Shown here one piece after another: positions 3,994-64,000 of a DNA stretch of 64,000 bases. Each line of letters starts with the position of its first letter. Position 1 is the first letter of the stretch. The notes under the pieces are model-generated. The model was not told the DNA's origin. It saw only the letters and a list, made by a program, of their open reading frames with translations, and ran no database searches. The stretch covers positions 186,001 through 250,000 of IMG/VR virus record IMGVR_UViG_3300032236_000747. One strand, given 5' to 3'. Position numbers and translations under genes: made by a program.

Positions 3994-4007
3994 TCTTTTT
4001 TAAATAC

Positions 4008-4029
4008 AAGCCCGCAACCTGCGGGCTTT
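4008..4029 (+). terminator. Hairpin, possible intrinsic terminator
   Basis: AAGCCCGCA-acc-TGCGGGCTT, 15 nt after the 3993 stop; the T-tail is short. Confidence 0.55.
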
Positions 4030-4077
4030 CCCTTGAACATATTTAGGTAAATACAAATACTTGGATATATATTACAC

Positions 4078-7000
4078 ATGTCAATAGCAGAAAGCCTAAG
4101 TTTTTTCCTCTCAACCGCAACTACTACTGCGACCATATTCACCTATTCTCCGGAAAGCATTCTTAACCCTGCTGCGAGTACTAGTACCAATACAGGTGCT
4201 CTAACTGTAGTAGGCGGTGTTGGTGTAGGCGGCAGCATTTATGCGGGAAACATTTACAGTAATGGTACATTAATTACTTCCGGTGGTAGCGGAACTACTG
4301 CTACTAACACAGCCAGCGGATTGTTAATAGGTTATACAAATACTGCAACTTATAACGCAGGCTTAGGTTATCAGTCGGGTAACTTGACCATGACTGGCGC
4401 TAATAACCTGGCTATTGGTCGGTGTGCTCTATGCATTAATACTACTGGCACTAATAATACTGCTTTAGGATATGGCGCATTATATTGTAATACATACGGC
4501 AACAATAATTTTGCTATAGGTTATAATGTCCTTAAGTGTAATACTACTGGTTTTAATAATATCGCAATTGGCTGTAATGCTCTATGCGGTAATACCACAG
4601 GACAAATGAACATTGCCTTTGGTACTTGTGCCGGCGGAAGTGGAAGCTACAATTTTGCCGCAGGTTGTAATGCAATGTATAGCGCCAACGGTAACAGTAA
4701 TATTGGTATTGGACCTTTTGCACTAACAATTGTTTCGGGAAGCTATAATGTAGCACTCGGTCCTTATACTATGCAAAGTGCTTCTAGCGCCTGTAATAAC
4801 TTTGCAGCAGGGTTTCGCTCACAACAATGTGTAACCACTGGTTGCAATAACTTTTCACAAGGCTTATGTGCTCTCTACGGTAATACTACCGGTTGCAATA
4901 ACTTTGCTGTAGGTTATCAATCTATGGGATGTACTAACGGCGGTAGCAATAATATAGCTATTGGACAATGTACTTTACGTGCCAACATTACCGGCTCTTT
5001 TAATATTGCATTAGGATGTGGTGCTCTTCAATCTAATACAGCCAGTAATAATATTGCTGTAGGCTATCAAACATTGTATTGTAACACAGCCGGAACCTAT
5101 AATATTGCGCTAGGTTATAACGTATTATACAATAACAGTGTAGGTTGTGGAAACTTTGCAGGTGGCACTTCGGCTCTTTACAGTAATACTACCGGTTGCA
5201 ATAACTTTGCTGTTGGAAACTTATCACAGTATTCTAGCACTGTTGGATGTAATAATATTTCTGTTGGATTTGATTCTCTTTTTTCTAATATCAGCGGTTC
5301 TAATAATATTGCGCTTGGTTATTTTACTTTATTTTGCAGTACAGCATCTAACAATATTGCTATTGGTGGCTCATCTCTAAGATACGCTAGCTACGGTGCA
5401 AATAATATTGCACTAGGTTGTAACACATTATATTGTAATTCTACGGGTTGTAATAACCTTGCTCTAGGTATATGTGCTCTTTATTGCAATACCGGTAGCA
5501 ACAACATAGCACTAGGTACTAGTGCAGGTTCTTCCCTTGCTATTGCCTGCAACAATGTAATCATAGGTGGCTATGGTGCTGTTAACTTTGCTAACAGCAA
5601 CAGTAACATCATCTTAGCCACAGGCGCAGGAGTAGTTCAACAACTACATAATGCCCAGGGTGCTGTTAGCTTTGGTTCAACAAGCTCATTTGGTGCAGCC
5701 GGCCAGGTACTATTAAGTAATGGTCCAAGTGCTCCTCCTACATGGGTTAATACTAGTTCGCTTGGATTAGGTGGTGGCGGCGGAGGTGCTGGCGCAAGTT
5801 TAAACACTTACTGCTCATTGATTATTCAAGGCGCAACTGCTGGTTCAAGCACAGGTCTAAATAACTTTGCCGTTGGATGTTGCGCATTATTTGCCAATAC
5901 TACTGGTGTTAATAATGTAGCGTTAGGTATATATACTCTTAAACTTAACACCTACGGTAGTAATAACTTTGCTGCTGGCTGCGTAGCTCTATGCGCAAAC
6001 ACCAGCGGATGCCATAACGTTGCGATTGGTTTTGGCGCACTAACTGCAAACTTAACTGGTTCCAATAATACAGCGATTGGGTGCGGTGCTCTTAGAAGTA
6101 ACACTTCCGCATGCCATAATACTGCTATTGGCTGTCAAGCTCTTGCTTGTAATACCATTGGTGGTAATAACACCGCTATAGGTGCCACAGCACTCAAATG
6201 TACTTCAACTGGTTGTAACAATATTGGTATAGGCTATGCTGCCCTAACATCTAATGTTACTGGTTGCAGTAATATAGGTATGGGATACGGTGCCCTTTAC
6301 AGCAATATTACTGGCAGTCAAAACATTGCTCTCGGTCAAAGTACCTTATGTTGTAGCCTTACTGGAAATAATAATACCGCGATTGGTCAGAATGCTGGCT
6401 GCGCTATTATAGGCGGTTCAAATAACACTATTATAGGTGGTTATGGTGCTGTTAACTTTGCTAACAGCAATAGTAATATTATTATAGCCACCGGTACAGG
6501 TACAGTTCAACAACTACATAATGCCCAGGGTGCTGTTAGCTTTGGTTCAACAAGCTCATTCGGTACTGCTGGTCAAGTATTATGTAGTCAAGGACCTAGT
6601 TTACCACCTGTGTGGGCTACAGTAAGTGCCGGCGGAGGTAGTTCGGCAACTTCTATCAGTTTAGGCACAGTATATGCATATACTCCGTCTGCTCTTGGTA
6701 ACTCAAATCTAGGATACCTAGCTGGCAACTCAACAATGACCGGATGTAATAACATCAGCATTGGATGTTGTGCTAACTGTTCTTTAACTTCAGCGTGCCA
6801 TACTATTGCTATTGGCGGTTACGCACTAAAATCTGGAACTACCGGCTATGGTAATATAGCAATTGGTTACAGTTCTGGATGTTTAACCAACGGCGGTCTT
6901 AACAACGTTGCAGTTGGTGCGTGTGCGCTGAGATGCAATATTACTGGTAATCAATCTATTGCGATTGGCGGCGGCGCACTAAACTGTAGTACTGCTAACT

Positions 7001-10000
7001 ATAACGTTGCAGTTGGTAGTTGTGCTGCCACAAACACAACAGGTGCTAATAATACCGCAATAGGTCACTCTGCCCTAAGTCAAAGTGCTACTAGCTGTTC
7101 TGCTGTTGCTGTTGGATTCTGTGCGTCATACGCAAACTTTTTATTCAGGGGTGTGGCCATTGGTGCTTACGCAATGGCTCAGGGCGTAGGTAGAAGTTTT
7201 AACAACGTGGCTATTGGCTACGGTGCTATGTGTAATAACACAACTGGTAGTCAAAATACTGCCCTCGGCACACGAGCGCTAGCTGCTAATACCTGTGGTT
7301 GCGGTAACTTTGCCACTGGTTACCAAGCATTAGTTTCTAATACCTACGGTAATAATAATATAGCATTTGGTTACGGTGCTGTGTGTAGCAACACTTCGGG
7401 ATGTAATAACATAGGTGTCGGTGTTTGTTCGTTATACCTTAGCCTCACAGGAAATAATAACATCGCCCTAGGTGCATGTTCGGGAAACTGTATTACTACA
7501 GGTAGTAATAACGTTATTGTCGGTAGCTATGGTGCAGCTAACTTTGCTAATAGTAATAGTAATATTATCTTAGCCACTGGTGCTGGTGTAGTTCAACAAC
7601 TGTTTAACGCCACTGGTGCTGTCAGTTTCGGTTCAACAAGTTCATTTGGTACTGCTGGTCAAGTATTAAGCAGTCAAGGACCTGGATTACCTCCTGCCTG
7701 GGCCGCAGCAAGTGGCGGTAGTGCTATTCCTATTGCTACAGCAACTACACTAGGTCTTGTCTACGCATTTACAACTGCTACTTGTTTTAATACAAGTCTA
7801 GGATACAGTGCTGGTAATAATACAATGACCGGTACCTATAATGTAGCCATAGGTTATCGAGCTCTTATTGCTAACACTACAGGTTGCGGAAACATTGCAG
7901 CTGGTTATCAAGCACTATGTACTAATACCATCGGTGGTAATAATATTGCTTTTGGCGGACGTGCCCTTCAATGTAACCTTACAGGTAACTATAATATTGC
8001 GTTAGGATACGGTGCGTTACTTCAAAATACCTGCGGTGTTCAAAATATTGCGATTGGTCAAAGTGCTCTTAACACAAATCAACTAGGTTGTAGTAATATA
8101 GCGTTAGGCTGCAGGGCACTGGGATTTAGCACAACAAGTTTTAATATTGCAATCGGATCATTCTCGCTTGCTTGTAATATTACTGGTAGTTGTAATGTTG
8201 GTATTGGATATGGTACATTATACGGTAATCTTGCTGGAAATGGTAACTTTGCCGCAGGATATAAGGCCTTGTATGCTAACACCGTTGGTAACTATAACGT
8301 AGCTATTGGTTTTTGTGCATTAAAAGTTAATACCTCAGGCGCCAATAATACCGCAATAGGACTTTACGCACTTACATGCAATACCACTGGTTGTTCTAAT
8401 ATAGCTATTGGTCCGTATGCTCTTTATTGTAATATTACAGGCAGTCAGAATATTTCCATTGGATGTTGCGCACTTTTATGTAACTCTGGTGGTTCCTCTA
8501 ATATTGCTATAGGTGTACTTGCTCTTTACTGTAATACAACTGGTCTTGCTAATATTGCTATAGGATGCGGTGCTCTTAGGTCTAACTCAGCCGGCCAAAA
8601 CAATATTGCGTTGGGATCAGCTAGCCTTTACGGAAATACTTTTGGTACTAATAATATTGCGTTTGGCAATAGGGCATTAAACATTAATACCTATGGATGT
8701 GGTAATATTGCCATGGGTGCGTGTTCACTTCGTTGTAACATTACTGGAACAAATAACATTGCCCAAGGTTGCGGTACACTTTTCTGCAATACCTGCGGAT
8801 GTGGTAATATTGCCCAGGGATATAGTGCGCTTCGTTGCAATACTTACGGCAATCATAATACTGCCGTAGGTTATGCTGCTCTTAATAATAACTCTACCGG
8901 TAATAATAATATTGCCTTTGGTTATTGTGCACTTTACGGAAATAGCACCGGATCTAATAACTTTGCTGCGGGTTGTTTATCTCTTTTCTGTAACTCCAGC
9001 GGTCAAAACAATATTGCCGTTGGATTTTGTACTCTTTTCTGTAATGTCAGTGGTAACTGTAACATTGCGCTAGGTTATACTGCTCTTCGAAATAATCAAG
9101 GCGGCACTAATAATACAGCTATTGGCTCTGGCGCATTATCTAATAACACTATAGGCAATGAGAACGTGGCCTTTGGCTGGATGGCAATGGGTTGTAATGT
9201 TCTTGGCACAGGTAACATTGCTCTTGGTTCTTGTGCTATTGGATTAGGAACAGCTGGCTGTCAAAATATTGCTATGGGGCAAGCTGCATTATATTACAAT
9301 CTTTGCGGAGGCTACAATATAGCGGTTGGGCAAGCTTCTTTAAGATGCAATACCTATGGAAATCATAACGTGGCCTTAGGCTACGGAACTATGACTATTG
9401 GTACATGTGGTAACTGTAACGTTGCTATTGGTCGCTGTGCTTTATCAACTAACACTTGCGGAAGTTCTAACGTAGCAGTAGGAGCCGGCGCATTACTTGC
9501 TTCTCCGTGTTCGTTTGGTAACATAGCAGTAGGATATAACGCAGCATATTGCCAAGGTTCTATAGGTAACGTGGCCATGGGCTACGGTGCTATGCAATAC
9601 GGCATTTGTGGTTGTCAAAATATTGCCATCGGCTTTGCAGCAATGAAACAGTGCGCTACATCGGGATATGCACCGATTAACGGAAATCAATGTATTATAA
9701 ATCCCGGATCTGGTTGGACTGCGTATGCCATGAATCCTAGCACAGTGCTGGTAGCAAACTATGGAGGTTTCCAGCCTTCAATATGTAATGTTCTAGTAAG
9801 TATTGATCCGTTCGGATCACTGATGCAGGTATGTTCTCCGGTACCGTTAGTTGCAGGGTGTTTTTACTTTGTACAAGGCAATCCTTGTATTGGATACGGT
9901 AGCACTGCTAATATATGTGCTTCGTATGGGTTTGCTTCATCGCCAAGACACGGCGGATGTCTTAACATAGCAATAGGAACATGCAGTATGATGGCAGTCG

Positions 10001-12075: not shown

Positions 12076-12081
12076 AATAAA

Positions 12082-14919
12082 ATGGCAAAACACGTAATAT
12101 TAGAAAGCTATACCTTTACCCCGTCTACTAAGACCGTGGTTATCACAGGTAAAAACATTAGAAGAGAGCAGTTATTATTGATCACTAACGTTACCAGCAA
12201 CGTAGTTATCTATAACTTTTCAGACGCATCAGTTGGCGCCGCTTCTTACACTAACGCAGCTGATTCAATAACTGGTCAAGAAACAACTACCATTGTATTA
12301 AGTTATAACACAGCAGCTATGAGTGCCAGTGATAAGTTATCTATACTAGTTGAAGAAACTTATACTGAAATTATTCCTTCAGAAACTATGCGTGATCCAG
12401 TTGATAAACTACGTGTATCAACTCCACAAGCATTAATTGATACTGACTTTGAATACGGTACACAACCTACTAAATGGGAAGGTCTAAGTTTACTATCAAA
12501 TCGTCCGGGCACGTTCTATGATGTTACTACGCCAATCTCCAATACAACAATCACTAACATCACAGCGGCCGGCAGAGCTATTACAGTTACTCTAAACAAT
12601 ACCTCAATGGTATCAGTAGGACAACCGATCTTTATTATTGGTTCATTGGATACAGGTAACGTAGACGGATGGTGGGTTGTTGACAGTATTGTAGCTAACA
12701 CTAGCTTTACGTTCACTTCAACTAACATAGCGGCAACAAGTTTATTTGACGTACAAAAAACGTATGTATATCCTGCTAGTTTCTTTACAGGTGCCGGTAT
12801 TGGTGTTTCAAGTATTACTGTACTTAATAATACAGCAACAGTGACTACCTCGTTGCCACACGCACTTAACGTAGGCGACGGAATATATATTATAGGTACT
12901 ACTGGTGTAACAGGTCTCAACGGTTCATGGACAGTTGCTTCAACTCCTTATAACAACGTGTTTACCTATGTTGCTAGTCAGACACTGACAGGAACACCTA
13001 CATTAGCCAATGGACCTAACCAAACATTGTATCCAAGATCGTTGGGCTATATTCAACATAGAGCCTTTGACGGCGGAGTTCAGTTTAGTAACGTAACTCC
13101 TTATCATGGATATCAACTTGTACGTCAAACACGTCGTCAGTTCCGCTATCAATCGGGTAAAGGTATTCAGTTCTCAACTGGTAGTATCTTAAAACCAACA
13201 GTGAACCCAGATAGAATTACTAGTTCAGGTCAGGTAGTAACTGTGACAACAAAATATCCACATGGTCTATTACCTGGCGGTGTTATTAAAGTCAGCGGAG
13301 CCAACGAAACTGCATATAACGGTACGTTTACTGTAGTTTCTTCACCTTCGCCTACATCTTTTACCTATACAGCAGCTACTTCTCCTAGTGCTAGCCCTGC
13401 TACTGGATTCCCTATTACCATAAGTCCATTCAGCTGGTACGGTGGTAAGAACCGTGTAGGCATGTTTGATAGTCAAAACGGATTCTTCTTTGAATATGAC
13501 GGACAAACACTTTATGCCGTTAAACGCTCAAGCACCACACAGATTTCTGGTAACAGTCAAACTAGTCCATTAGGTTACATCGTAACTGGTACAAATACTA
13601 GATACAGTCAAGAACTTAAACCAGGTGACAACATTGTTATCCGTGGTATGACATATCTAGTAACAGGTATTATGAGCGATACTACAATGGCTATTAACCC
13701 TGAATACAGAGGTATGAATGCTACTACTGCTACAGTTATTAGTAAAACCATAGATCAACGTTATCCACAGAGTTCTTGGAACATTGACAAAATGGACGGA
13801 ACTGGTCAAAGTTTAATGAACCTTGACTTAAATAAAATGCAGATGTTCTACGCTGACTTTACATGGTATGGTGCTGGCGCTATACGTTTTGGCTTTAAAG
13901 ATAACCGTGGCCAAGTTATATACGCACATCGTATTCCAAACAACAACGTTAACACTGAAGCATATATGAGAAGCGGTAACTTAGTAGCACGCTATGAAAC
14001 AAACTCTATACCTCCAACTACGTATCTAACAGCTACCCTAGCTCAAGCAGCTACTACAGGTGCTGCTATCTATGTAGCTGATGCTAGTTTGTTCCCAAGT
14101 ACAGGTACTGTAGTAGTTACACAAACCGGTACTAGTTTTGCTTCTGTTGAATACATTAACTATTCTGCTAAAACAACTTCTACACTAACTATTTCCAGTC
14201 GTAACACATTTGGTGGTACGGGTACTGCGGCACAGTTTACACTAGTAGGAACATCGTCAACATTCCCAGGCGGAACAGCACCAACTATGGTCACATTGTT
14301 TAGCCCACAACAGGCTAGTTCTATTAGCCACTGGGGTTCAAGTGTTATCATGGACGGACGTTACGACGATGATAAATCACTAGTGTTTAACGTAGGTCAA
14401 AATACTCCATTTACCAACCTAACACAAAACGTTCGTGTTCCATTGTTGAGTATTCGTATTGCTCCAACAGTTGATAACGGTAGTATTGGATTGTTGGGTT
14501 ACAGAGAAATCATGAACCGTATGCAGTTAACACTACGTCAAATGGACGCCTATACAACAGGTACCGCTTTCCGTATAGAACTAGTATTGAACGGTCGTCC
14601 AACTCAGGGCGTGTGGCAAAACGTTGGTGGATCAAGTCTAGCACAGGTAGCATATCACTCAGGTGCTGGTACTATCTTGGGCGGTGAATCAGTATTTGGA
14701 TTCTTTACCAACATAGCAGCAGCAACATCACAAGACTTGTCACAGGTCCGAGACATTGGAACTAGTATTCTAAGTGGCGGAACTAGTACTAACGTAAGTA
14801 CCACAGTTAATAACGTATATCCAGATGGTCCGGACGTATTGACACTGTGCGCTACGGCTGTACAAAGTAGCAGTAACCAAATCTTTGCTCGTATAAGTTG
14901 GACAGAAGCTCAGGCTTAA
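12082..14919 (+). CDS. Large beta-rich virion structural protein; paralog of 787..3993
   Basis: 945 aa with the same conserved blocks and the same MAK start and EAQA end as 787..3993. Confidence 0.7.
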   Translation: MAKHVILESYTFTPSTKTVVITGKNIRREQLLLITNVTSNVVIYNFSDASVGAASYTNAADSITGQETTTIVLSYNTAAMSASDKLSILVEETYTEIIPSETMRDPVDKLRVSTPQALIDTDFEYGTQPTKWEGLSLLSNRPGTFYDVTTPISNTTITNITAAGRAITVTLNNTSMVSVGQPIFIIGSLDTGNVDGWWVVDSIVANTSFTFTSTNIAATSLFDVQKTYVYPASFFTGAGIGVSSITVLNNTATVTTSLPHALNVGDGIYIIGTTGVTGLNGSWTVASTPYNNVFTYVASQTLTGTPTLANGPNQTLYPRSLGYIQHRAFDGGVQFSNVTPYHGYQLVRQTRRQFRYQSGKGIQFSTGSILKPTVNPDRITSSGQVVTVTTKYPHGLLPGGVIKVSGANETAYNGTFTVVSSPSPTSFTYTAATSPSASPATGFPITISPFSWYGGKNRVGMFDSQNGFFFEYDGQTLYAVKRSSTTQISGNSQTSPLGYIVTGTNTRYSQELKPGDNIVIRGMTYLVTGIMSDTTMAINPEYRGMNATTATVISKTIDQRYPQSSWNIDKMDGTGQSLMNLDLNKMQMFYADFTWYGAGAIRFGFKDNRGQVIYAHRIPNNNVNTEAYMRSGNLVARYETNSIPPTTYLTATLAQAATTGAAIYVADASLFPSTGTVVVTQTGTSFASVEYINYSAKTTSTLTISSRNTFGGTGTAAQFTLVGTSSTFPGGTAPTMVTLFSPQQASSISHWGSSVIMDGRYDDDKSLVFNVGQNTPFTNLTQNVRVPLLSIRIAPTVDNGSIGLLGYREIMNRMQLTLRQMDAYTTGTAFRIELVLNGRPTQGVWQNVGGSSLAQVAYHSGAGTILGGESVFGFFTNIAAATSQDLSQVRDIGTSILSGGTSTNVSTTVNNVYPDGPDVLTLCATAVQSSSNQIFARISWTEAQA

Positions 14920-14932
14920 TAGGAGACCACTA

Positions 14933-17440
14933 GTGTCATCAAGAAATAGTGTTCAGCATTTTATATCAACTACTGAACCCAATAACGTACAGTTAGGTGA
15001 CGAGTGGTTAAATCCCACAACCGGTATTCTATACAAACGAACACTGGTCAATGGATCTGTTGCCTGGGCAGCTACCGGTCAAACTAACTCTAGTAATGTT
15101 ACATTGTTTAGTGGCGGTCAGTCTGGTCAAGTACTGCAGATAGTCAATAATACACCTACCTGGGTTAATACCAGTACTTTGATAGCGGTTGCTAGTAGTG
15201 GCGGCGGCGCAAGTTTAAATGCCAGCTGTTCTTTGATTATTAACGTATTTAATGCTGGTTCCGGTCCGGATAATATAGCAATAGGAGCCTATGCCCTTTG
15301 CTCAACTACTGCTGGCTGCAATATTGCACTTGGTCGTTCAGCACTGTTATCTAATACTACAGGTGTTTATAATTTTGCTGCCGGAGTCAACACTCTCGGA
15401 AGTAATACTTACGGTAATCATAATGTAGCCATTGGCGGAACAGCTCTTTACTCTAATACCAGCGGTGGATGTAATATTGCCATTGGCGTAAACACACTTT
15501 TTAAAAATACTAGCGGTTTTAATAATTTTGCTGCTGGCAGTAATGCGTTAACGTGTAATACTACAGGAAATAATAACACAGCTATTGGGTATTATGGACT
15601 GAAAAGTAACACCTATGGTATCAATAATACAGCGATCGGTTGCGGTGCACTCTGCTGCAATATTTCAGGTAATAGCAATACTGCTATTGGTTTTTATGCG
15701 TTAAGCAGAAGTAAAACATCAAATAATAACGTAGCAATCGGTTATTGTGCTTTATATTCGTTCAACGGCGGCGCAAGCTATGGAGGTTGTAATATTGCCA
15801 TAGGCACAGGTACCATGGCTTTAATAACATCTGGTTGTAATAATATTGCCATGGGCAATAATGCATTATGTTCCTCTCTTCTTAACGCCACATTTAATGT
15901 TGCTATTGGTAATAATGCAATGTCTACTACCTGTCTTTCTGACAGCAACGTAGCAATAGGACCTAGTGCTCTTAGGGGGGTTGTGGGAGTATGTAACGTT
16001 GCGTGTGATAGTGTTGCGATTGGTTCAGGTGCTTTAGGCTCTAGTGCTTGTTCTAAGTACGACGTAGCCATGGGCTATTCACCACTTAGTCAAAATACTG
16101 GTACAGGTAATGTTGCTATAGGACAGTTTGCTATGTATGCTAGTCTGTCGGCCTGCCACAGTATTGCAATCGGTAGTAATGCGTTAAGCTGTGCCTGTTG
16201 TGCTAACCTTAACATAGCACTAGGGTGCTATGCTCTAGCATGTTCATTATCGGGTACACAAAATATCGCAATCGGATCTACTGCTGCTTGCGCACTTGCT
16301 CAAGGCTACGGTAACGTGGCTATCGGATGTTGTGCTCTAGGTTTTTCAAATGTCGGATGTGATAATGTGTTCATTGGTCGAAATACTGGCCGAGGATCAA
16401 ACACTACCAGCAGCGCCGGCGTTCATAATCTGGCATTAGGTTATGGTGCATTAGTTAATAATAATGCTAATAGTTATAATATAGCCATGGGGTATCAAAG
16501 TCAGTATTGTGCTTCAAGCACATGTCAGAACATATCATTGGGTCGTTTATCAATGACGTGTGCGCTCACTGGCGCTAACAATATTGCCATTGGTTATTGT
16601 TCACTCTTTGCAAACTGCGGTCCTAATAACGTTGCCTTGGGATATGGCACAAACCCTGCCGGCGGAACTGGTAATATTTCTATAGGTAGCTATGCTAACT
16701 CTAACGTAAATGGAAACTACAATATAGCAATCGGCACATGTGCAAGCCTTGGCTGTAGCCTAGGTGCGCTATCTGGGTGTCATAATACTACTATGGGATT
16801 TAAAGCAGGATCCCTGTTGTGTTCAGCAGCCGTGCATAATCTTGCCATCGGCTGTGGCGCATTATGTAGTGCTTGTTTATCTTGTTGTAATATTGCTCTA
16901 GGTAATGGTACACTAATGTCAACTACTACCGGTAACAACAATACCGCAGTTGGTTATTGCGCAGGAACAACCAATACCTACGGAAATAATAATACATTTA
17001 TAGGTAGTGGAGCGTTTGGTGCTAGTGCTACTAGTTGTAATGCTATTACACTGGGTAATTCTAGTATTACCACAATTCGTGCTCAGGTAACTACCATTAC
17101 AGCACTATCAGATTGTCGTGATAAAACTAATATCTGCGGATTACCTATTGGACTTGATTTTATTCGTGCACTGCGTCCAGTTAAGTTTGACTGGAATATG
17201 CGAGATGGCGCCAAGGTAGGAATACCAGAAGCTGGATTTATTGCTCAAGAACTAGATGAAGTACAAACTAGATTTACAGCAACTGACTACCTAAACTTAA
17301 TCTTAAAAGAAAATACAGAACGATTAGAAGCTACTCCTGGTAAACTGTTACCAGTATTAGTAAAAGCAGTACAAGAACTAGCTCAAGAAAATGAAGATTT
17401 AAGATCTAGGATTGAAATCTTAGAAGGGAAAATAGTATAA
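14933..17440 (+). CDS. Cys-rich tail fibre with a C-terminal intramolecular chaperone (peptidase S74)
   Basis: GTG start after AGGAG. N-x-A-I-G repeats. The C-terminus has SDCRDKTNI...LRPVKFDW...GFIAQE...LVKAVQEL followed by a coiled coil. Confidence 0.85.
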   Translation: MSSRNSVQHFISTTEPNNVQLGDEWLNPTTGILYKRTLVNGSVAWAATGQTNSSNVTLFSGGQSGQVLQIVNNTPTWVNTSTLIAVASSGGGASLNASCSLIINVFNAGSGPDNIAIGAYALCSTTAGCNIALGRSALLSNTTGVYNFAAGVNTLGSNTYGNHNVAIGGTALYSNTSGGCNIAIGVNTLFKNTSGFNNFAAGSNALTCNTTGNNNTAIGYYGLKSNTYGINNTAIGCGALCCNISGNSNTAIGFYALSRSKTSNNNVAIGYCALYSFNGGASYGGCNIAIGTGTMALITSGCNNIAMGNNALCSSLLNATFNVAIGNNAMSTTCLSDSNVAIGPSALRGVVGVCNVACDSVAIGSGALGSSACSKYDVAMGYSPLSQNTGTGNVAIGQFAMYASLSACHSIAIGSNALSCACCANLNIALGCYALACSLSGTQNIAIGSTAACALAQGYGNVAIGCCALGFSNVGCDNVFIGRNTGRGSNTTSSAGVHNLALGYGALVNNNANSYNIAMGYQSQYCASSTCQNISLGRLSMTCALTGANNIAIGYCSLFANCGPNNVALGYGTNPAGGTGNISIGSYANSNVNGNYNIAIGTCASLGCSLGALSGCHNTTMGFKAGSLLCSAAVHNLAIGCGALCSACLSCCNIALGNGTLMSTTTGNNNTAVGYCAGTTNTYGNNNTFIGSGAFGASATSCNAITLGNSSITTIRAQVTTITALSDCRDKTNICGLPIGLDFIRALRPVKFDWNMRDGAKVGIPEAGFIAQELDEVQTRFTATDYLNLILKENTERLEATPGKLLPVLVKAVQELAQENEDLRSRIEILEGKIV

Positions 17441-17441
17441 C

Positions 17442-20400
17442 ATGACCATAGCTTTTAACATAGCTACTTTATTAAGTAGCACAGCTACTCAAACTATTGG
17501 TACTGCTACAAATAGTGCTGTTTCTGTAAACTTATCAGGCGGCGCCGCTGGCTCTTTACCCTACCAAAGTGCTCCTAATGCCACTGTATTTTTATCCGTA
17601 GGCACTAATGGACAGGTATTGCAGTTAGTTAGCGGAGTTCCAACTTGGGTTAACACCAGTACATTAATAGCAGCCGGCGCTGGTGGTGGCGCCAGTTTAA
17701 ACGCTTATTGTTCATTGATTATTCAAGGAGCAACTGTTGGGTCTAGCACTGGTCTAAACAACTTTGCCGTTGGATGTTGTGCTCTATTTGCCAACACCAC
17801 AGGTTGTAATAATATTGCCTTAGGTTTTAACAGTCTTAACGGAAATACTACAGGTAGTAATAATATTGGAATGGGCTACGGTTCTTTAAAAAATAGTGCC
17901 ACCGGCGTATGTAACATTGCTATCGGCATTCAAGCCATGTTCTGTAACTGTGGATATAATAATATTGCCATGGGCCAGGCCCTGGGTAGTAATGGTGTTG
18001 GTTCTATCAATGTTGCTATAGGTAATTTTGTTTTAAGCACAGCAGGTCATTCCGGGTGTTATAATATAGGTATAGGTAGCAACGCTCTTCAAAATAACGT
18101 AAGTGGTTGTAGCAATATTGCTCTTGGTTTTGCCTCTCTAATACTTAATAATGGCGGAAGCAATAACGTTGCGTTAGGACTGTGCGCCCTTTATAATAAT
18201 ACAGCAAGTAACAACATAGCCATTGGCAGCAATGCGCTAGTCTTAAATACTGCCAGCCAATTCAATACTGCAATAGGCATAGGTGCTGCTGCTGGACACT
18301 CTATTTTACTTAACTGTAGTAAAGGATGTAATACAGCAATAGGTTATTGTGCTTATAACTGCGTTGGCGGTTATGGTAATACTGCTATAGGTTTCTGTGC
18401 TATGAGTACAGGCACTGGCATAAACTATAATAATGTGGCACTGGGATACAAAGCTATGTCCTGTGTAGGTTGCTCAGCTAGCAGTTTTGGCAACGGATAC
18501 AATGTAGGCATCGGATATGGTGCAATGTCAAAGAGTGGTAACCAGGCCAACGTGGGCATTGGTTACCTTGCCTTAAATGGCGGACCAGCAGCTATTCCTG
18601 CTGATTTAGTAACAAATGCGTGTAATGTTGCCATAGGTACAACAGCAATGTCGTGTTCTACCGCAAGTATACATAATGTAGCAATAGGCGCCAGTGCATT
18701 AAAGGCAACAAAATGTGGGTGTTTTAATGTTGGTGTAGGAACCTGTGCAGGATACGGCATTGGTTCTCCGGCTTGTTTGAATACTTTTTTAGGAGCTTAT
18801 GCCGGTGGTGCTGGCTTGATTACCGGATGCTATAATGTTGGCATCGGTGCATGTTCAATGTATGCTGGTTCTTTTGCGGCAGGTTGTTTCAATATAGGTA
18901 TTGGGGCATGTACACACCGATTCGCTGTTAGTCCAGTTAATACCATAGCTATTGGTCAAACGGCCATGGGCGGCTCGTTGTGTACTACAGTTGATAATAT
19001 TGCTATTGGCTCATTTTCTATGTTTGGTTGCGGAATAAGTTCCAGCGGCGCTTGTAATATCGCAATTGGTTTGAACTCGATGTATACAAACTGTGCTGGC
19101 TATGGTAACGTAGCTATTGGTGCTAATACCATGGTCGGAGCTCCTTTTACTGGTTACACAGCATGCCTTAACGTGGCTATAGGACATTGTGCTCTAAATA
19201 CTGTTACTACTGCGATATCTAATATCGCTATTGGAGCTACTGCTCTAAAATCTAATACCAGCGGCTGTTATAATACAGCTATCGGATTGTGCGCATTGTA
19301 TAGTAACACTACTGGTCTTAGTAACGTAGCAATAGGAGTTAATACCTTACTTGGTAATACATACGGTTATAATAACTTTGCCGTTGGTCCAAACGCTCTG
19401 CGTTGTAATATCACAGGATGTAATAACATTGCTATAGGATATAGCGCCCTTTATAATAGCACTAGTGCCTTTAATATTGCTATTGGGTGTGCTGCCATGT
19501 GCTGTAACACTATCGGTACCTATAATGTTGCCATAGGAGACGGAGCAATACAATGTAACAGTACCGGTAAACAAAATGTAGCCGTTGGTGGTATAGCAAT
19601 GAACAGTAATACCAGCGGCTACGGTAATACTGCTATAGGTTATACTGCTATGGCATGTAATACTACCGGTGCAAACAACGTCGGAGTTGGGCGATATGCT
19701 TTATATGCTAATACTACCGGAAGTAATAATGTCGGATTAGGTGTCGGCGCACTATGCGGTAACATTACCGGAAATGCTAACATTGCTATTGGATATGATG
19801 CCCTTTATCAAAGTACAGGCGGTAACTGTAATATTTCGCTAGGTTCCTTCTCAATGCAGTCTAATACCAATGGTAGCTTTAATGTAGCACTTGGGTATCA
19901 ATCGTTGAGCTCTAATACCAGCGGTTGTTATAACATTATTATGGGATTTAACGCAGGGTATGCTAACACTGCTGGAAACTATAATAGTGCTATTGGATAC
20001 CAAGCTCTTAATAAAAATACCACTGGCTCTAATAATGTTGCTATAGGACCTAGTGCTCTTTATGGAAATACAACAGGTCAGCATAATATTGCTTTAGGGT
20101 TTAATACTTTAGTAACAGCGGGTTATGGATACTATAATGTAGCAATAGGATGTCAAGCACTATATCTTAATACTACTGGATGTAATAACGTTGCTATTGG
20201 TGGAATGGCAGGATGTACTAATACTACAGGCGTTAATAACGTATTCATAGGCTGTAATGCCAACGGTCTTGCTGCTACTTGCTCAAACACTATTACACTA
20301 GGTAATTCCAGTATCGCTACTATCCGTGCTCAGGTCACTACTATTACCGCGCTATCAGATTGTAGAGATAAAACAAATATTTGCGGATTACCAATTGGAC

Positions 20401-20675
20401 TTGATTTTATTCGTGCCCTACGCCCAGTTAAGTTTGACTGGAATATGCGAGATGGCGCCAAAGTAGGTATACCAGAAGCTGGATTTATTGCTCAAGATCT
20501 TGACGAAGTACAGAAGAAGTTCACAGCAACTGATTATCTAAACTTGATCATCAGCAACGAGGACGGGTCAAGATTGGAAGCAACGCCTGGTAAACTTTTA
20601 CCAGTTCTAGTACAAGCTGTTAAAGAACTAGCAGCCGAAGTAGATAGACTCCGTTTACTAGTAGAGCCACAATAA
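17442..20675 (+). CDS. Cys-rich tail fibre with a C-terminal intramolecular chaperone (peptidase S74)
   Basis: Same repeat type as 14933..17440, and an S74 domain nearly identical to it at the protein level. Confidence 0.85.
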   Translation: MTIAFNIATLLSSTATQTIGTATNSAVSVNLSGGAAGSLPYQSAPNATVFLSVGTNGQVLQLVSGVPTWVNTSTLIAAGAGGGASLNAYCSLIIQGATVGSSTGLNNFAVGCCALFANTTGCNNIALGFNSLNGNTTGSNNIGMGYGSLKNSATGVCNIAIGIQAMFCNCGYNNIAMGQALGSNGVGSINVAIGNFVLSTAGHSGCYNIGIGSNALQNNVSGCSNIALGFASLILNNGGSNNVALGLCALYNNTASNNIAIGSNALVLNTASQFNTAIGIGAAAGHSILLNCSKGCNTAIGYCAYNCVGGYGNTAIGFCAMSTGTGINYNNVALGYKAMSCVGCSASSFGNGYNVGIGYGAMSKSGNQANVGIGYLALNGGPAAIPADLVTNACNVAIGTTAMSCSTASIHNVAIGASALKATKCGCFNVGVGTCAGYGIGSPACLNTFLGAYAGGAGLITGCYNVGIGACSMYAGSFAAGCFNIGIGACTHRFAVSPVNTIAIGQTAMGGSLCTTVDNIAIGSFSMFGCGISSSGACNIAIGLNSMYTNCAGYGNVAIGANTMVGAPFTGYTACLNVAIGHCALNTVTTAISNIAIGATALKSNTSGCYNTAIGLCALYSNTTGLSNVAIGVNTLLGNTYGYNNFAVGPNALRCNITGCNNIAIGYSALYNSTSAFNIAIGCAAMCCNTIGTYNVAIGDGAIQCNSTGKQNVAVGGIAMNSNTSGYGNTAIGYTAMACNTTGANNVGVGRYALYANTTGSNNVGLGVGALCGNITGNANIAIGYDALYQSTGGNCNISLGSFSMQSNTNGSFNVALGYQSLSSNTSGCYNIIMGFNAGYANTAGNYNSAIGYQALNKNTTGSNNVAIGPSALYGNTTGQHNIALGFNTLVTAGYGYYNVAIGCQALYLNTTGCNNVAIGGMAGCTNTTGVNNVFIGCNANGLAATCSNTITLGNSSIATIRAQVTTITALSDCRDKTNICGLPIGLDFIRALRPVKFDWNMRDGAKVGIPEAGFIAQDLDEVQKKFTATDYLNLIISNEDGSRLEATPGKLLPVLVQAVKELAAEVDRLRLLVEPQ

Positions 20676-20739: not shown

Positions 20740-21675
20740 ATGGCTAAAACAATAATCTATATCGACGGCGGCGCCGGTCGTGTTATCGCAGCAATACCTG
20801 CACTACTCAAATTCCACAGATTAAACCCGAACTTAGATTGGGCAATCGTTATCCCTGCTTGGGATTATCTGCTTTGGAGCATTCCAGAACTTCAAGATCG
20901 CGTCTATGGCGCAGATACGAAAGGTATTTGGGACAATGTAATCAAAGACGCAGATGAAATAATGACTCCAGAGCCCTACAGACTACCTGCTTATTTCCGT
21001 CAAGAAATCAGCTTAGTTGAAGGATTTGATCGTGAGATCAATGGTACCAAAGATCACAGCGATCTAGGTGTTCCAAAAATGATTTTCAACAAAACTGAAG
21101 AGAAATGGGCAGTAAACACCATTGCTGATGTCAAGCAACAACAGCAAAAAGCTAAGACTATTGTCATTCAACCATTTGGACGCGGCGCTACATTAGATCG
21201 CAATGACGTCATTGACAGCGCAAGTCGCAGTTTGAGTGCTGATGCGTATATCAGTTTAACTAAAAAACTTGCCGCAAGATATAACATGATCTTCTTTGGC
21301 GAACAACAACTCCAAATCACCACAGATAGTTACACAGTTAAACTACCTCCGCAGACTGATCTGCGTATGTGGGCATCATTGATTAGCTATGCTGATTACT
21401 TTGTTGGTGTTGATAGTGTGGGACAACACATGGCTCGTGCTACAGGTTGTCCAGGAACAGTTATTTTTGGATCAACATTCCCAGTTAACACAAGTTATCC
21501 TGATTATTTCCAGATCATTGAAAGAGCAGGACAAAAGAAATATAGTCCGATTCGTATCACTGGATTAGACAGTGTGTTAGCGGATCGTTACAATGATACA
21601 ATGATGGACTTTGAAGAAAGTGAAATTACTTCAATCTACAATCAAATTGTAGCGGACATTGAGAAAACAAAATAA
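20740..21675 (+). CDS. GT-B glycosyltransferase, GT9 (heptosyltransferase)-like
   Basis: N-terminal DGGAGRVIAAIPAL, middle IVIQPFG, and ADYFVGVDSVGQHMARATGCPGTVIFGST, which matches the GT9 'DSg.mHlA.a.g.p.v.lfG.t' signature. Confidence 0.75.
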   Translation: MAKTIIYIDGGAGRVIAAIPALLKFHRLNPNLDWAIVIPAWDYLLWSIPELQDRVYGADTKGIWDNVIKDADEIMTPEPYRLPAYFRQEISLVEGFDREINGTKDHSDLGVPKMIFNKTEEKWAVNTIADVKQQQQKAKTIVIQPFGRGATLDRNDVIDSASRSLSADAYISLTKKLAARYNMIFFGEQQLQITTDSYTVKLPPQTDLRMWASLISYADYFVGVDSVGQHMARATGCPGTVIFGSTFPVNTSYPDYFQIIERAGQKKYSPIRITGLDSVLADRYNDTMMDFEESEITSIYNQIVADIEKTK

Positions 21676-23357: not shown

Positions 23358-24176
23358 ATGCAACAACAATACTATTTTATATCAGGATTGCCGAGAAGTG
23401 GATCGACATTATTAACATCTATTTTAAAGCAAAATCCAAAGTTCACTGCGCAAATCAGTGATCCGTTACATGATTATGCTAGAAATATTTTAACAACAAC
23501 TCATGCGAGTGTAGGTATGGAAGCAGCAGTACCTATTCCTAAGAGACAACATCTTATTAAAGGTTTGTTTAACTCGTTTTATGAAGATGGCAACGAAGTT
23601 TGTTTTAATACAAACAGGGCCTGGACTGCTAATACTACTTTATTAAAAGACCTCTTTCCTTATACAAAGATTATTATTTGTATTAGGGATATTCCTTGGA
23701 TTTTAGATAGCTTCGAACAACTAAATGCTAAAAATCCGTATACCATTAAAGCATTGTATCACCACCAAGACCTTGGCACAGTTTATCATAGATGCGCTTC
23801 TTTAATGGATCCTAATAATGGTTATGTAGCAGGACCAATGACTTGTTTAAAACAAGCGTTGTTCAGTAATGAAAAAGAAATGTTGTGTATTGTTGACTAT
23901 GATGCCCTGGCTAAAAATCCAGAAGAGACAATGCGTAAAGTTTACAGCTTTATTAATCAACCATATTACAATCACGATTTTAACAATGTAGAAGATAGCT
24001 ATGATGAGTTTGACGAACAAACAAACATCAAGGGATTGCATACAGTACGCAAACAGGTGGAATACCGCCAAAGAAAACCAATCATACCTTCAGACCTGTG
24101 GCAACAAAATGTTGCTCAAAGTTTTTGGAAGTTTGATTTTGATCATATAAAGAGACAAATGTTATGGATAGAATAA
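23358..24176 (+). CDS. PAPS-dependent sulfotransferase
   Basis: 5'-PSB loop SGLPRSGSTLL, 3'-PB motif IRD...ILDS, and YDALAKNPEETMRKVYSFI. Confidence 0.9.
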   Translation: MQQQYYFISGLPRSGSTLLTSILKQNPKFTAQISDPLHDYARNILTTTHASVGMEAAVPIPKRQHLIKGLFNSFYEDGNEVCFNTNRAWTANTTLLKDLFPYTKIIICIRDIPWILDSFEQLNAKNPYTIKALYHHQDLGTVYHRCASLMDPNNGYVAGPMTCLKQALFSNEKEMLCIVDYDALAKNPEETMRKVYSFINQPYYNHDFNNVEDSYDEFDEQTNIKGLHTVRKQVEYRQRKPIIPSDLWQQNVAQSFWKFDFDHIKRQMLWIE

Positions 24177-24970: not shown

Positions 24971-24972
24971 CT

Positions 24973-26531: not shown

Positions 26532-26532
26532 A

Positions 26533-63999: not shown

Positions 64000-64000
64000 A

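What the first reader, a model, noticed from the sequence alone, without database searches (positions are those of the whole stretch)
4078..20675. Out-of-register cysteine enrichment restricted to three fibre proteins
Seen: I count about 44 Cys in the 835-aa fibre, and the 2665-aa and 1077-aa fibres look similarly dense. The neighbouring 1068-aa and 945-aa proteins have only 2 and 1 Cys. Cys does not hold a fixed position in the 17-aa repeat. It appears at the variable positions (GC, CC, LxCN, GCN), while Asp/Glu/Lys are nearly absent. It even enters the S74 motif (SDCRDKTNIC) and the LamG motif (EFWIC). It disappears from the last ~400 aa of the giant fibre. Inference: this looks like selection for exposed thiols, serving as modification acceptors, as inter-chain cross-links formed after lysis, or for metal binding or redox buffering, rather than a structural disulfide register. 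That is unusual for proteins folded in a reducing cytoplasm.
Basis: partly seen in the sequence, partly recalled or inferred. Interest (0 to 1): 0.75.

Follow-up and report, generated by a model that had tools for sequence, protein, structure and literature searches.

The report
Cysteine-coated beta-roll tail fibres
A 355-kb uncultured jumbo phage builds its long tail-fibre shafts from a 17-residue repeat whose outward-facing positions carry many, unusually fast-changing cysteines, and a phage-specific glycosyltransferase-like gene next door hints that these thiols are chemically modified rather than used as structural disulfides.

Summary
The counts are right: 140, 44 and 52 Cys (4.8-5.3%) against 2 and 1 in the interleaved proteins and 1.0% in the rest of the proteome. 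"Restricted to three" is wrong. Two more giant fibres just upstream, and two other virion proteins elsewhere in the genome, show the same enrichment.

The shafts are YadA-like left-handed beta-rolls, predicted to form trimers. Two of the fibres end in S74 chaperone domains.

Cys sits only at variable repeat positions (6, 7, 10, 11, 16; less at 13, 14, 17). About 80% lie outside the modelled trimer interface. I found no pairing or ladder statistics. Individual sites turn over as fast as any other variable residue, yet the density is kept across a diverged clade. The enrichment is codon-frame specific and is not due to recent repeat amplification. Cys mostly displaces Asp/Glu and Ser/Thr.

So a structural disulfide register is rejected, and selection on surface composition is supported.

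New lead: a virus-specific GT9-like gene lies next to the most Cys-rich tail protein in every phage locus I examined. These include jumbo phages, cyanomyoviruses, an Aeromonas phage and a Vibrio phage. I therefore favour thiols as acceptors or capped sites of a fibre-modifying system (0.35), ahead of post-lysis cross-linking (0.25), compositional drift (0.17) and metal binding (0.08). The function is inferred, not shown.

The parts
3..749 (+). C-terminal 248 aa (0 Cys) of a fourth Cys-rich beta-roll fibre. The whole gene is genome 179331-186749: 2472 aa, 115 Cys.
787..3993 (+). Interleaved Cys-poor virion structural protein (1068 aa, 2 Cys; phrog_5838). Serves as an internal control.
4078..12075 (+). 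Giant fibre P0003 (2665 aa, 140 Cys). Several 17-aa-repeat shafts are joined by three ~75-aa Cys-poor junction modules, with junction motifs at aa 531, 821 and 1183.
4423..10881 (+). Cys-bearing span of P0003 (residues 116-2268).
10804..11265 (+). Laminin_G_3 / concanavalin-like domain of P0003 (aa 2243-2396). It holds the last Cys (EFWIC).
10882..12072 (+). Cys-free distal 397 aa of P0003, including a few Cys-free repeat units. Presumed receptor-binding end.
12082..14919 (+). Interleaved Cys-poor virion structural protein (945 aa, 1 Cys; phrog_5838).
14933..17440 (+). Fibre P0001 (835 aa, 44 Cys): beta-roll shaft plus a C-terminal S74 intramolecular chaperone.
17108..17266 (+). Peptidase_S74 match in P0001 (aa 726-778). 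The motif S-D-C-R-D-K holds the invariant Ser and Lys.
17442..20675 (+). Fibre P0002 (1077 aa, 52 Cys): beta-roll shaft plus a C-terminal S74 chaperone.
20355..20516 (+). Peptidase_S74 match in P0002 (aa 972-1025).
20740..21675 (+). GT9-like glycosyltransferase of a virus-specific family (phrog_8954). Its homologues flank Cys-rich tail proteins in other phages.
21675..23357 (+). NodU/CmcH-type carbamoyltransferase.
23358..24176 (+). Sulfotransferase (Sulfotransfer_3 / Sulfotransfer_1).
24164..24970 (+). Conserved 268-aa protein of the cluster. No family match.
24973..25620 (+). HAD-IIIA phosphatase, GmhB-like (heptose 1,7-bisphosphate phosphatase-like). It scores below the equivalog cut-off.
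25617..26531 (+). GT4-type glycosyltransferase (Glycos_transf_1).
26533..26898 (+). Small nucleotidyltransferase (cytidylyl/adenylyl-transferase-like).
26895..27515 (+). APS-kinase-like P-loop domain fused to DUF2061.

Best explanation
The genes encode homotrimeric tail fibres. Their shafts are YadA-like left-handed beta-rolls built from a 17-residue unit, N-[IV]-A-[IL]-G-x-x-A-L-x-x-N-T-x-G-x-x.

In this phage lineage Cys has been favoured as a bulk surface property of the shaft. It fills 10-16% of the outward-facing variable positions. Individual sites come and go, and the density stays. It mainly displaces Asp/Glu and Ser/Thr.

The thiols are therefore not a folding scaffold. They are reactive handles used after folding.

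My preferred mechanism is that they are acceptor or capping sites for a phage-encoded fibre-modifying system. That system would be led by the GT9-like glycosyltransferase immediately downstream, with heptose-supply, carbamoyl-transfer and sulfo-transfer genes. Modification would happen in the cytoplasm, before release. Any thiols left unmodified would oxidise opportunistically outside the cell.

Shown: the counts, the positional pattern, the lack of a register, the site turnover, the clade-wide persistence and the gene neighbourhood.
Model-level: the beta-roll fold, the trimer, and which positions face the interface.
Inferred: that the enzymes act on the fibres, and that Cys is the acceptor.
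For: (1) Pattern. Cys occurs only at variable positions and occupancy is independent between sites.

(2) Exposure. The AF2 monomer has pLDDT 87.9. It gives Foldseek matches to YadA (1p9h) and BoaA (3s6l) heads, and to ICA/S74 domains. The ESMFold2 trimer scores ipSAE 0.94 against a best control of 0.00; that mark was reached by 20 of 30 proteins solved as pairs of one chain and 1 of 23 proteins solved as single chains. The trimer's interface is repeat positions 17, 2, 4, 5 and 6.

(3) Selection acts on density, not on sites.
- The fibres are 46-52% identical to their orthologues in L006, while the flanking enzymes are 78-95% identical.
- Cys density is kept: 4.3-5.1% in L006, 6.1% in L001, 3.4-4.3% in L020 and 5.8-6.0% in L022.
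- Cys sites are conserved only 13-33%.
- A control protein family keeps 86-100% of its Cys.

(4) It is not a nucleotide or amplification artefact. TGY is enriched in frame only, and the repeat units are 51% identical at nucleotide level.

(5) Cys gains track losses of D/E (7.5% to 2.3%) and S/T (35.6% to 27%) at the variable positions.

(6) Neighbourhood. A homologue of the GT9-like gene lies beside the most Cys-rich tail protein in all 13 loci examined:
- the window, L001, L006, L020 and L022;
- P-SSM2, S-SSM7, S-CAM3 and Sf-FS3;
- AG-345-P14 and AG-345-O18;
- Aeromonas phage HJ05 and Vibrio phage D505.
The Cys-rich proteins belong to several unrelated families. In S-CAM3 they are the three most Cys-rich of 155 ORFs.

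(7) No phage thiol oxidase, thioredoxin, cysteine dioxygenase (CDO) or formylglycine-generating enzyme (FGE) was found.

From established knowledge, not tested here: Aah/TibC heptosyltransferases modify beta-helical adhesins in the cytoplasm; Ser-directed GT-B enzymes such as OGT can also glycosylate Cys; and HypF-type carbamoyltransferases S-carbamoylate a Cys.
Against: - There is no direct evidence that any fibre residue is modified.
- The cluster looks like ordinary heptose/LPS-type glycan genes, and its role in cyanophages is unknown (PMC3037559).
- The GT9-like protein matches the Aah/TibC model at only 15.8 bits against a cut-off of 200.
- The cyanophage Cys-rich neighbours have strongly conserved Cys. 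That looks structural and does not fit a simple 'acceptor' role.
- Adjacency may only reflect shared membership of the fibre module.
- Two moderately Cys-rich fibres have no GT9-like gene within 10 kb: L002 (2.7% Cys) and L021 (3.4% Cys).
- P-SSM2 has the cluster, yet its beta-roll fibre has only 1.1% Cys.
- No GT9 enzyme is known to make S-glycosides.
Confidence: 0.35

Rival explanations
1. Post-lysis oxidative cross-linking, keratin-like hardening. Dense surface thiols oxidise in oxic water into opportunistic disulfides, within a trimer, between chains at positions 6/17, and between neighbouring fibres. This stiffens or bundles very long, almost charge-free fibres. Only density is needed, not a register.
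For: - Density is kept while sites turn over.
- 40-60% of shaft Cys have another Cys within a plausible sequence-distance neighbourhood.
- Positions 6 and 17 lie in the modelled inter-chain interface.
- No phage oxidase was found, so any oxidation would be extracellular.
- Precedent: cyanophage Pam3 fibres are disulfide-linked to the baseplate and released by DTT (PMC9942802).
Against: - There is no excess of any spatially plausible Cys pair. Stacked same-position pairs are 35 against about 43 expected, and the 16-to-7 and 17-to-6 cross-interface pairs are at or below expectation.
- 40-60% of Cys would stay unpaired.
- In-register neighbours on parallel strands are poor disulfide geometry (my knowledge).
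- Free surface thiols risk virion aggregation.
- It does not explain the recurrent GT9-like neighbour.
Confidence: 0.25
2. No thiol-specific function. Cys is a tolerated small uncharged residue in a lineage whose shafts avoid charge. The trait would be inherited compositional drift, and its location next to the enzyme cluster would be incidental.
For: - Cys-rich fibres fall almost entirely in one clade: 9 of the 10 Cys-rich sequences, and 3 label changes on the tree.
- Site-level conservation is no higher than for Ser or Tyr.
- Cys rises as D/E falls.
Against: - 13-26% Cys at five positions is far above any neutral codon expectation, and is frame-specific.
- The density persists across fibre divergence down to about 40% identity.
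- Unrelated tail-protein families beside the same GT9-like gene are also Cys-rich.
- Surface Cys is normally selected against in extracellular proteins (my knowledge).
Confidence: 0.17
3. Metal binding or redox buffering. The thiolates would chelate soft metals or iron, or hold Fe-S clusters, or act as sacrificial antioxidants.
For: - Cys replaces the hard-ligand residues Asp and Glu.
- Position 6 lies at the trimer interface, where three symmetry-related Cys could meet.
- SOD-SufC-SufBD lie directly upstream of another partly Cys-rich virion protein in this genome.
- Suf or IscA-like genes lie near Cys-rich fibres in L002 and L021.
Against: - There are no conserved ligand sets, and sites turn over.
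- CxxC spacing (positions 7-10) is depleted, at 0.5x expectation.
- The Suf genes are about 150 kb from the fibres in question.
- Thiols would not stay reduced in oxic water.
Confidence: 0.08
4. A structural disulfide ladder, as in cysteine-braced beta-solenoids such as the Tenebrio antifreeze protein.
For: A beta-solenoid fold with about one Cys per rung.
Against: - No fixed register and no pair correlation.
- Cys is conserved only 13-33% between orthologues.
- Most homologues fold the same repeat with about 0.2% Cys.
Confidence: 0.03

Closest known systems
YadA-like head domains of trimeric autotransporter adhesins (PDB 1p9h YadA, 3s6l BoaA, 9gh4 CbpF)
   Same: Left-handed parallel beta-roll built from short N-x-x-A-x-G repeats, and a trimer. 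The Foldseek probability is 0.99-1.0, with target-normalised TM 0.43-0.57. Some JGI annotators call homologues 'trimeric autotransporter adhesin'.
   Different: The period is 17 residues, not 14. There is no Pfam YadA_head hit and no membrane anchor. The setting is a phage fibre ending in an S74 chaperone or a LamG domain. Cys is 5%, whereas this sequence family has a median of about 0.2%.
Phage fibres and spikes with a C-terminal intramolecular chaperone (Peptidase_S74; endosialidase-type, e.g. PDB 3gw6; SPO1-group tail spikes; Pelagibacter and Methylophilales phage fibres)
   Same: S74 domain with invariant Ser, Asp, Arg and Lys. The same repeat family is present; the nearest database phages are 27-36% identical.
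   Different: Those relatives are Cys-poor. Here Cys even enters variable positions of the S74 motif, and only within the Cys-rich clade.
Cyanophage Pam3 fibre-baseplate disulfides (PMC9942802)
   Same: A phage tail uses Cys for covalent, redox-sensitive chemistry after assembly.
   Different: Pam3 uses a handful of defined Cys (fibre Cys28 with wedge Cys). Here there are hundreds of unpositioned surface Cys.
Aah/TibC (BAHT) heptosylation of AIDA-I/TibA beta-helical adhesins
   Same: A GT9-type enzyme and heptose-supply genes sit next to a beta-solenoid adhesin-like protein that folds in the cytoplasm.
   Different: Similarity to the Aah/TibC model is far below its cut-off (15.8 against 200 bits). 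The acceptor is unknown. Carbamoyl- and sulfo-transferases are additional here.
'LPS gene clusters' of large cyanomyoviruses (P-SSM2, S-SSM7, S-SM2; PMC3037559)
   Same: Orthologous GT9-like and Nol-like carbamoyltransferase pair with heptose genes, embedded in the fibre/neck module.
   Different: In cyanophages the Cys-rich neighbours are 260-356-aa Gly_rich_2 proteins with conserved Cys. Here the neighbours are the beta-roll fibres themselves, with unconserved Cys, and sulfation genes are also present.
Cysteine-braced beta-solenoids (Tenebrio molitor antifreeze protein type)
   Same: A short-period solenoid with roughly one Cys per coil.
   Different: There Cys is in a strict register and conserved. 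Here it is neither.

Membership tests
Peptidase_S74 intramolecular chaperone fibres | Pfam PF13884 match above the gathering score at the C-terminus | tested here: met
   36.3 and 36.2 bits against a cut-off of 22, for P0001 and P0002. P0003 has none.
Peptidase_S74 intramolecular chaperone fibres | Conserved Ser...Lys dyad in S-D-x-R-x-K | tested here: met
   S207, D208, R210 and K212 are invariant in the 72-sequence alignment A1.
Peptidase_S74 intramolecular chaperone fibres | Autoproteolytic release of the chaperone after trimerisation | not testable with these tools
   Needs expression and a gel or MS. The model's C-terminus matches ICA domains 7dc3 and 3gw6.
Trimeric autotransporter adhesin, YadA-like head | Left-handed parallel beta-roll fold | tested here: met
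   AF2 pLDDT 87.9. Foldseek finds 1p9h and 3s6l at probability 0.99-1.0, with weak E-values (0.02) and target-normalised TM 0.43-0.57.
Trimeric autotransporter adhesin, YadA-like head | 14-residue NSVAIGxxSxAxxx repeat / Pfam YadA_head | tested here: not met
   The period is 17, and there is no PF05658 hit. A separate 540-aa protein at genome 295580 does show a 14-aa period.
Trimeric autotransporter adhesin, YadA-like head | C-terminal beta-barrel membrane anchor | tested here: not met
   The C-termini are an S74 chaperone, or LamG plus a distal domain.
Homotrimeric fibre | Three chains associate along the shaft | tested here: met
   ESMFold2, 3 copies of P0001:520-835: ipSAE 0.94 against a best control of 0.00. 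That mark was reached by 20 of 30 proteins solved as pairs of one chain and 1 of 23 proteins solved as single chains. My own alignment was used, so these counts hold only roughly. This is model support only.
Laminin_G_3 / concanavalin-like lectin domain | Pfam PF13385 above the gathering score | tested here: met
   59.1 bits against 27.6, at P0003 aa 2243-2396.
Disulfide-ladder beta-solenoid | Cys at fixed repeat positions forming regular pairs | tested here: not met
   Cys is spread over 5-8 positions and co-occurrence equals expectation.
Disulfide-ladder beta-solenoid | Cys among the most conserved residues | tested here: not met
   13-33% conserved between orthologues, against 86-100% in the control family.
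BAHT-type protein heptosylation (Aah/TibC) | Enzyme matches the Aah/TibC equivalog model | tested here: not met
   TIGR04414 scores 15.8 bits against a cut-off of 200. Only the Pfam GT9 superfamily match passes, at 29 against 22 bits.
BAHT-type protein heptosylation (Aah/TibC) | Activated-heptose supply encoded alongside | tested here: inconclusive
   A GmhB-like HAD phosphatase scores 87.6 bits against 178, and there is a small nucleotidyltransferase. The cyanophage clusters carry annotated heptose kinase, adenylyltransferase and isomerase genes.
BAHT-type protein heptosylation (Aah/TibC) | Adhesin residues carry heptose | not testable with these tools
   Needs mass spectrometry.
Diversity-generating retroelement target | Reverse transcriptase and a template repeat | tested here: not met
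   No RVT_1 match in the 354,680-bp genome.

The most novel reading that the evidence does not exclude
The virus-specific GT9-like family (phrog_8954) is a protein glycosyltransferase dedicated to Cys-rich tail proteins. The shaft cysteines would be S-linked acceptor sites for a heptose-based, carbamoylated and/or sulfated glycan, or would be directly S-carbamoylated. That would give these phages a hydrolysis-resistant, enzymatically installed surface coat on their fibres. It would be a virion-wide cysteine modification system not described in viruses.
Probability: 0.15. Interest if true: 0.85.

Novelty: new variant of a known kind. Interest (0 to 1): 0.6.

Why it matters
Fibres set host range and are a virion's most exposed parts. 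A lineage that keeps one reactive thiol per 4.8-Å rung on 50-nm shafts, with no disulfide register, points to surface chemistry not yet considered for phages. Candidates are enzymatic S-modification, redox-triggered hardening and metal capture.

The recurrent pairing of an uncharacterised GT9-like gene with Cys-rich tail proteins covers jumbo phages, cyanomyoviruses and phages of Aeromonas and Vibrio. It gives a concrete, testable function for the long-unexplained 'LPS gene clusters' of marine cyanophages. It would also provide a marker for finding modified virions in metagenomes.

If instead the thiols simply cross-link or are neutral, the result is a compositional curiosity of one clade.

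Tried and rejected
- Single-sequence AF2 of P0001:440-835 was useless (pLDDT 32.6). An MSA was needed.
- A sequence search of the PDB gave nothing for the fibre, and only chance hits for the GT9-like protein.
- The search for related loci with alignment A1 failed for lack of a conserved stretch. A single-protein query worked.
- Megablast against the phage collection found no near relative.
- The environment could not be established. The sequencing-run look-up returned coded metagenomes only, and sample ids occur in no paper.
- Nucleotide-bias explanation: rejected, because TGY is enriched only in frame.
- Recent repeat amplification: rejected, because units are 51% identical at nucleotide level and TGT and TGC are mixed.
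- DGR mutagenesis: rejected, because there is no reverse transcriptase.
- A phage-encoded disulfide or thiol-oxidation pathway (Erv1/ALR, thioredoxin, cysteine dioxygenase, FGE): none found. There is only one NrdC-like glutaredoxin.
- Cyanophage identity: there is no psbA. The terminase is closest to Pseudomonas phage PA5oct, at 56%.
- Link between Cys-richness and the S74 domain: rejected. A collagen-like S74 fibre of 2308 aa has 1 Cys.
- Fe-S ligation: no CxxC excess.
- Literature searches for Cys-rich phage fibres found nothing comparable.
- An alternative genetic code was not considered necessary. The frames are open under table 11 and carry in-frame Pfam domains.


Full report
**What is there.** The window is bases 186001-250000 of a single 354,680-bp viral contig. 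GC is 40.4%, and it is rated complete by CheckV. The phage is a myovirus-type jumbo phage, with sheath, tube, T4 gp15-like, UvsX and gp32-like genes. Its large terminase is closest to Pseudomonas phage PA5oct, at 56%. It has no psbA.

Bases 787-20675 hold five long same-strand ORFs. Three are fibres made mostly of a 17-residue repeat:
- P0003, 4078-12075, 2665 aa;
- P0001, 14933-17440, 835 aa;
- P0002, 17442-20675, 1077 aa.

P0001 and P0002 end in a Peptidase_S74 intramolecular chaperone. P0003 carries a Laminin_G_3 domain near its end. The other two ORFs (1068 and 945 aa) are paralogous virion proteins of another family, phrog_5838.

**The observation.** The counts are exact. The three fibres have 140, 44 and 52 Cys (5.3, 5.3 and 4.8%). 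The interleaved proteins have 2 and 1. The rest of the proteome has 1.0% Cys. The 120 best database homologues have a median of 0.18%.

In 277 exact 17-residue units the consensus is N-[IV]-A-[IL]-G-x-x-A-L-x-x-N-T-x-G-x-x. Cys frequencies by repeat position:

| Repeat position | Cys frequency |
|---|---|
| 1-5, 8, 9, 15 | 0% (about 0% at 12) |
| 6 | 15% |
| 7 | 16% |
| 10 | 13% |
| 11 | 26% |
| 16 | 23% |
| 13, 14, 17 | 4-6% |

Cys is missing from four kinds of region:
- the N-terminal roughly 100 aa;
- three ~75-aa junction modules inside P0003;
- the last 397 aa of P0003;
- most of the S74 domain.

One claim fails: the trait is not limited to three proteins.
- Two further giant repeat fibres lie just upstream. 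One is genome 166161-173126 (2321 aa, 75 Cys). The other is genome 179331-186749 (2472 aa, 115 Cys), and its Cys-free tip is window 3-749.
- Cys-rich stretches also occur in a 2137-aa protein (30 Cys in residues 1700-2100).
- A 540-aa protein with 14-residue YadA-type repeats carries CC doublets.
- By contrast, a 2308-aa collagen-like fibre with an S74 domain has a single Cys.

So the trait goes with beta-solenoid shafts, not with S74.

**Is it an artefact?** No.
- The frames carry in-frame Pfam domains, and homologues reach E = 1e-123.
- In-frame TGY codons are 4.55% in the fibres. They are 0.85% elsewhere in the genome and 0.15% in the interleaved genes. TGY in the other two frames does not show this enrichment.
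- Repeat units are only 51% identical at nucleotide level. Synonymous sites are saturated, and TGT and TGC are mixed. Recent amplification of a Cys-bearing unit is therefore excluded.
- There is no reverse transcriptase, so no DGR.

**Fold and exposure.** A single-sequence model failed. With a 72-sequence alignment (A1) AlphaFold2 gave pLDDT 87.9 for P0001:520-835, with one short strand per repeat.

Foldseek matched the repeat part to YadA-like heads of trimeric autotransporters (1p9h, 3s6l, 9gh4) and to left-handed beta-helix enzymes. It matched the C-terminus to intramolecular chaperone domains (7dc3, 3gw6). The E-values are weak (about 0.02) but the probabilities are 0.9-1.0.

A three-copy ESMFold2 model scored ipSAE 0.94 against 0.00 for the best control. 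That mark was reached by 20 of 30 proteins solved as pairs of one chain and 1 of 23 proteins solved as single chains. My own alignment was used, so these counts hold only roughly.

The listed interface residues map to repeat positions 17, 2, 4, 5 and 6 in every unit. Positions 7 and 9-14 are never listed. By frequency, about 80% of repeat Cys (positions 7, 10, 11, 13, 14, 16) lie outside the trimer interface. About 20% (positions 6 and 17) lie in it.

I had no coordinates. Exposure is therefore inferred from the interface list and from the variability and polarity of those positions.

**No register, no site conservation, but conserved density.**
- Within units and between successive (stacked) units, every Cys-Cys co-occurrence matches the product of the marginal frequencies.
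- Same-position stacking is 35 observed against about 43 expected.
- The number of Cys per unit follows the independent-site expectation.
- Only 40-60% of Cys have another Cys within a generous sequence-distance neighbourhood.

The closest relative, IMG/VR contig L006, has flanking enzymes 78-95% identical. Its two orthologous fibres are only 46-52% identical, and they still hold 4.3% and 5.1% Cys.

At variable repeat positions, Cys is conserved in 13-33% of aligned sites. All residues at those columns are conserved 20-29%, and a chance Cys match is 10-13%.

The same measure was applied to Cys-rich cyanophage proteins as a control. It gives 86-100% at 56-62% identity. The method can therefore detect structural Cys, and these fibre Cys are not structural.

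More distant relatives keep the density and the same positions:
- L022, 5.8-6.0%;
- L001, 6.1%;
- L020, four fibres at 3.4-4.3%;
- P0060, P0029 and P0034.

In a tree of the C-terminal 316 aa, 9 of the 10 sequences labelled Cys-rich fall in one group, with one outlier (P0058). The label needs 3 changes on the tree, and none of 500 shuffles did as well. Compositional attraction is a caveat.

Across 111 homologues, Cys at variable positions rises as Asp/Glu fall (median 7.5% to 2.3%) and Ser/Thr fall (35.6% to 27%). Lys/Arg and aromatics do not change.

**Neighbourhood.** Directly downstream (20740-27515) lies a same-strand cluster:
- a GT9-like glycosyltransferase of a virus-only family (phrog_8954);
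- a NodU-type carbamoyltransferase;
- a sulfotransferase;
- a conserved unknown protein;
- a GmhB-like phosphatase;
- a GT4 glycosyltransferase;
- a small nucleotidyltransferase;
- an APS-kinase-like protein.

The same cluster follows the Cys-rich fibres in L006, L001, L020 and L022.

Homologues of the GT9-like gene occur in 53 phage records. In every locus I opened, the GT9-like gene lies beside the most Cys-rich tail protein of the region:
- P-SSM2, S-SSM7, S-CAM3 and Sf-FS3 have two or three tandem Gly_rich_2 proteins of 260-356 aa with 8-11.6% Cys. In S-CAM3 they are the three most Cys-rich of 155 ORFs.
- Marine virus AG-345-P14 has a 286-aa protein with 9.1% Cys.
- AG-345-O18 has a 758-aa protein with 9.6% Cys.
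- In Aeromonas phage HJ05 the 559-aa gene directly upstream has 4.1% Cys, against 0-0.9% for the other neighbouring genes (the GT9-like gene itself has 2.0%).
- In Vibrio phage D505 the tail-tip fibre directly downstream has 41 Cys, at 7-9 per 100 aa in its N-terminal part.

HJ05 and D505 have only the GT9-like gene from the cluster. The conserved pair is therefore 'GT9-like plus a Cys-rich tail protein'. It spans several unrelated Cys-rich protein families.

Counter-examples of a sort also exist:
- L002 (2.7% Cys) and L021 (3.4% Cys) have no GT9-like gene within 10 kb.
- The P-SSM2 beta-roll fibre itself has only 1.1% Cys.

**Interpretation.** The data reject a disulfide scaffold and fixed metal sites. 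They support long-term selection for a thiol-rich, nearly charge-free shaft surface.

Two uses of such a surface are plausible. I rank enzymatic modification or capping first (0.35), for three reasons:
- the gene association recurs across lineages;
- uncapped surface thiols would be a liability in oxic water;
- there are precedents, known to me and not tested here. Aah/TibC heptosylate beta-helical adhesins in the cytoplasm, GT-B O-glycosyltransferases accept Cys, and HypF-type carbamoyltransferases S-carbamoylate Cys.

Opportunistic oxidative cross-linking after lysis comes second (0.25). It has a precedent in Pam3 (PMC9942802). However, no pair statistic supports it, and half the thiols would have no partner.

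Drift (0.17), metal binding (0.08) and a disulfide ladder (0.03) follow. None of these functions is demonstrated.

**Comparison and novelty.** These proteins work like YadA-type heads and S74-matured phage fibres. They meet the S74 and LamG family tests. They fail the tests for a trimeric autotransporter (period, Pfam model, anchor) and for cysteine-braced solenoids.

I found no description of Cys-coated fibres in the searchable literature. The cyanophage 'LPS clusters' remain of unknown function (PMC3037559).

I class this as a new variant of a known kind. The attached lead, phrog_8954 with Cys-rich tail proteins, would be of high interest if confirmed.

Noticed in passing
window 20740-27515: A same-strand cluster directly after the fibres. 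It holds a GT9-like glycosyltransferase, a NodU-type carbamoyltransferase, a sulfotransferase, an unknown 268-aa protein, a GmhB-like phosphatase, a GT4, a small nucleotidyltransferase and an APS-kinase-like/DUF2061 protein. It suggests a heptose-based, carbamoylated and sulfated glycan. It is conserved in L001, L006, L020 and L022.
   Followed up: yes
L023 10964-13830; L034 9926-12319; L033 10294-13112; L032 9964-12377: Cyanomyoviruses (P-SSM2, S-SSM7, S-CAM3, Sf-FS3) carry 2-3 tandem 260-356-aa Gly_rich_2 proteins (phrog_4205/35878) with 8-11.6% Cys. They lie just upstream of the GT9-like/carbamoyltransferase pair. Their Cys are 86-100% conserved between paralogues. Function unknown.
   Followed up: partly
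L024 10015-12288 and 17425-20712 (Marine virus AG-345-O18): A 758-aa non-repeat protein has 73 Cys (9.6%). A 1096-aa protein has its Cys concentrated in the C-terminal ~250 aa. They flank the same enzyme pair. Neither has a family match.
   Followed up: partly
genome 35107-43758 (L030 8108-16759), outside the window: Fe/Mn-SOD, a SufC-like ATPase and SufBD lie directly upstream of a 2137-aa virion protein whose residues 1700-2100 hold 30 Cys. Similar pairings occur elsewhere: SufC/SufBD 8 kb upstream of the Cys-rich fibre in L002, and SOD plus an IscA-like gene directly upstream of the fibre in L021.
   Followed up: partly
genome 295580-297202, outside the window: A 540-aa protein with canonical 14-residue YadA-type repeats carries recurrent CC doublets ('AGxCCQx'). 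This is a semi-regular Cys pattern, unlike that of the 17-residue fibres.
   Followed up: no
window 5500-5800, 6400-6700, 7480-7780 (P0003 aa ~490-570, ~780-860, ~1140-1220): Three near-identical ~75-aa Cys-poor junction modules resemble the N-terminal region of P0001 and P0002 (G-Q-V-L ... P-x-W). The giant fibre looks like several fibre genes fused head to tail.
   Followed up: partly
window 17045-17299 and 20292-20546: The 85 residues around the S74 cleavage motif of P0001 and P0002 are 95% identical (87% at nucleotide level), while the shafts are about 50% identical. This suggests gene conversion or a recent exchange of the chaperone module.
   Followed up: partly
L008 4562-5380; L013/L018 2631-3485 and 1131-1985: In unrelated viral contigs a distant sulfotransferase homologue (23-26% identity) directly follows a 17-residue-repeat fibre with 0.2-2.1% Cys. 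The L013 contig also has a distant GT9-like gene 2.7 kb further on.
   Followed up: partly
window 58000-64000: GC rises from about 40% to 46-51% at the end of the window. Just beyond it (genome 250-280 kb) many ORFs of about 100-360 aa have 3-6% Cys. No tRNA genes occur anywhere in the window.
   Followed up: no
L020 5605-8170: A relative's fibre module includes proteins with the N-terminal domain of the Bordetella-phage major tropism determinant (Mtd_N). One of them is fused to a 3.7%-Cys repeat fibre with an S74 domain.
   Followed up: no
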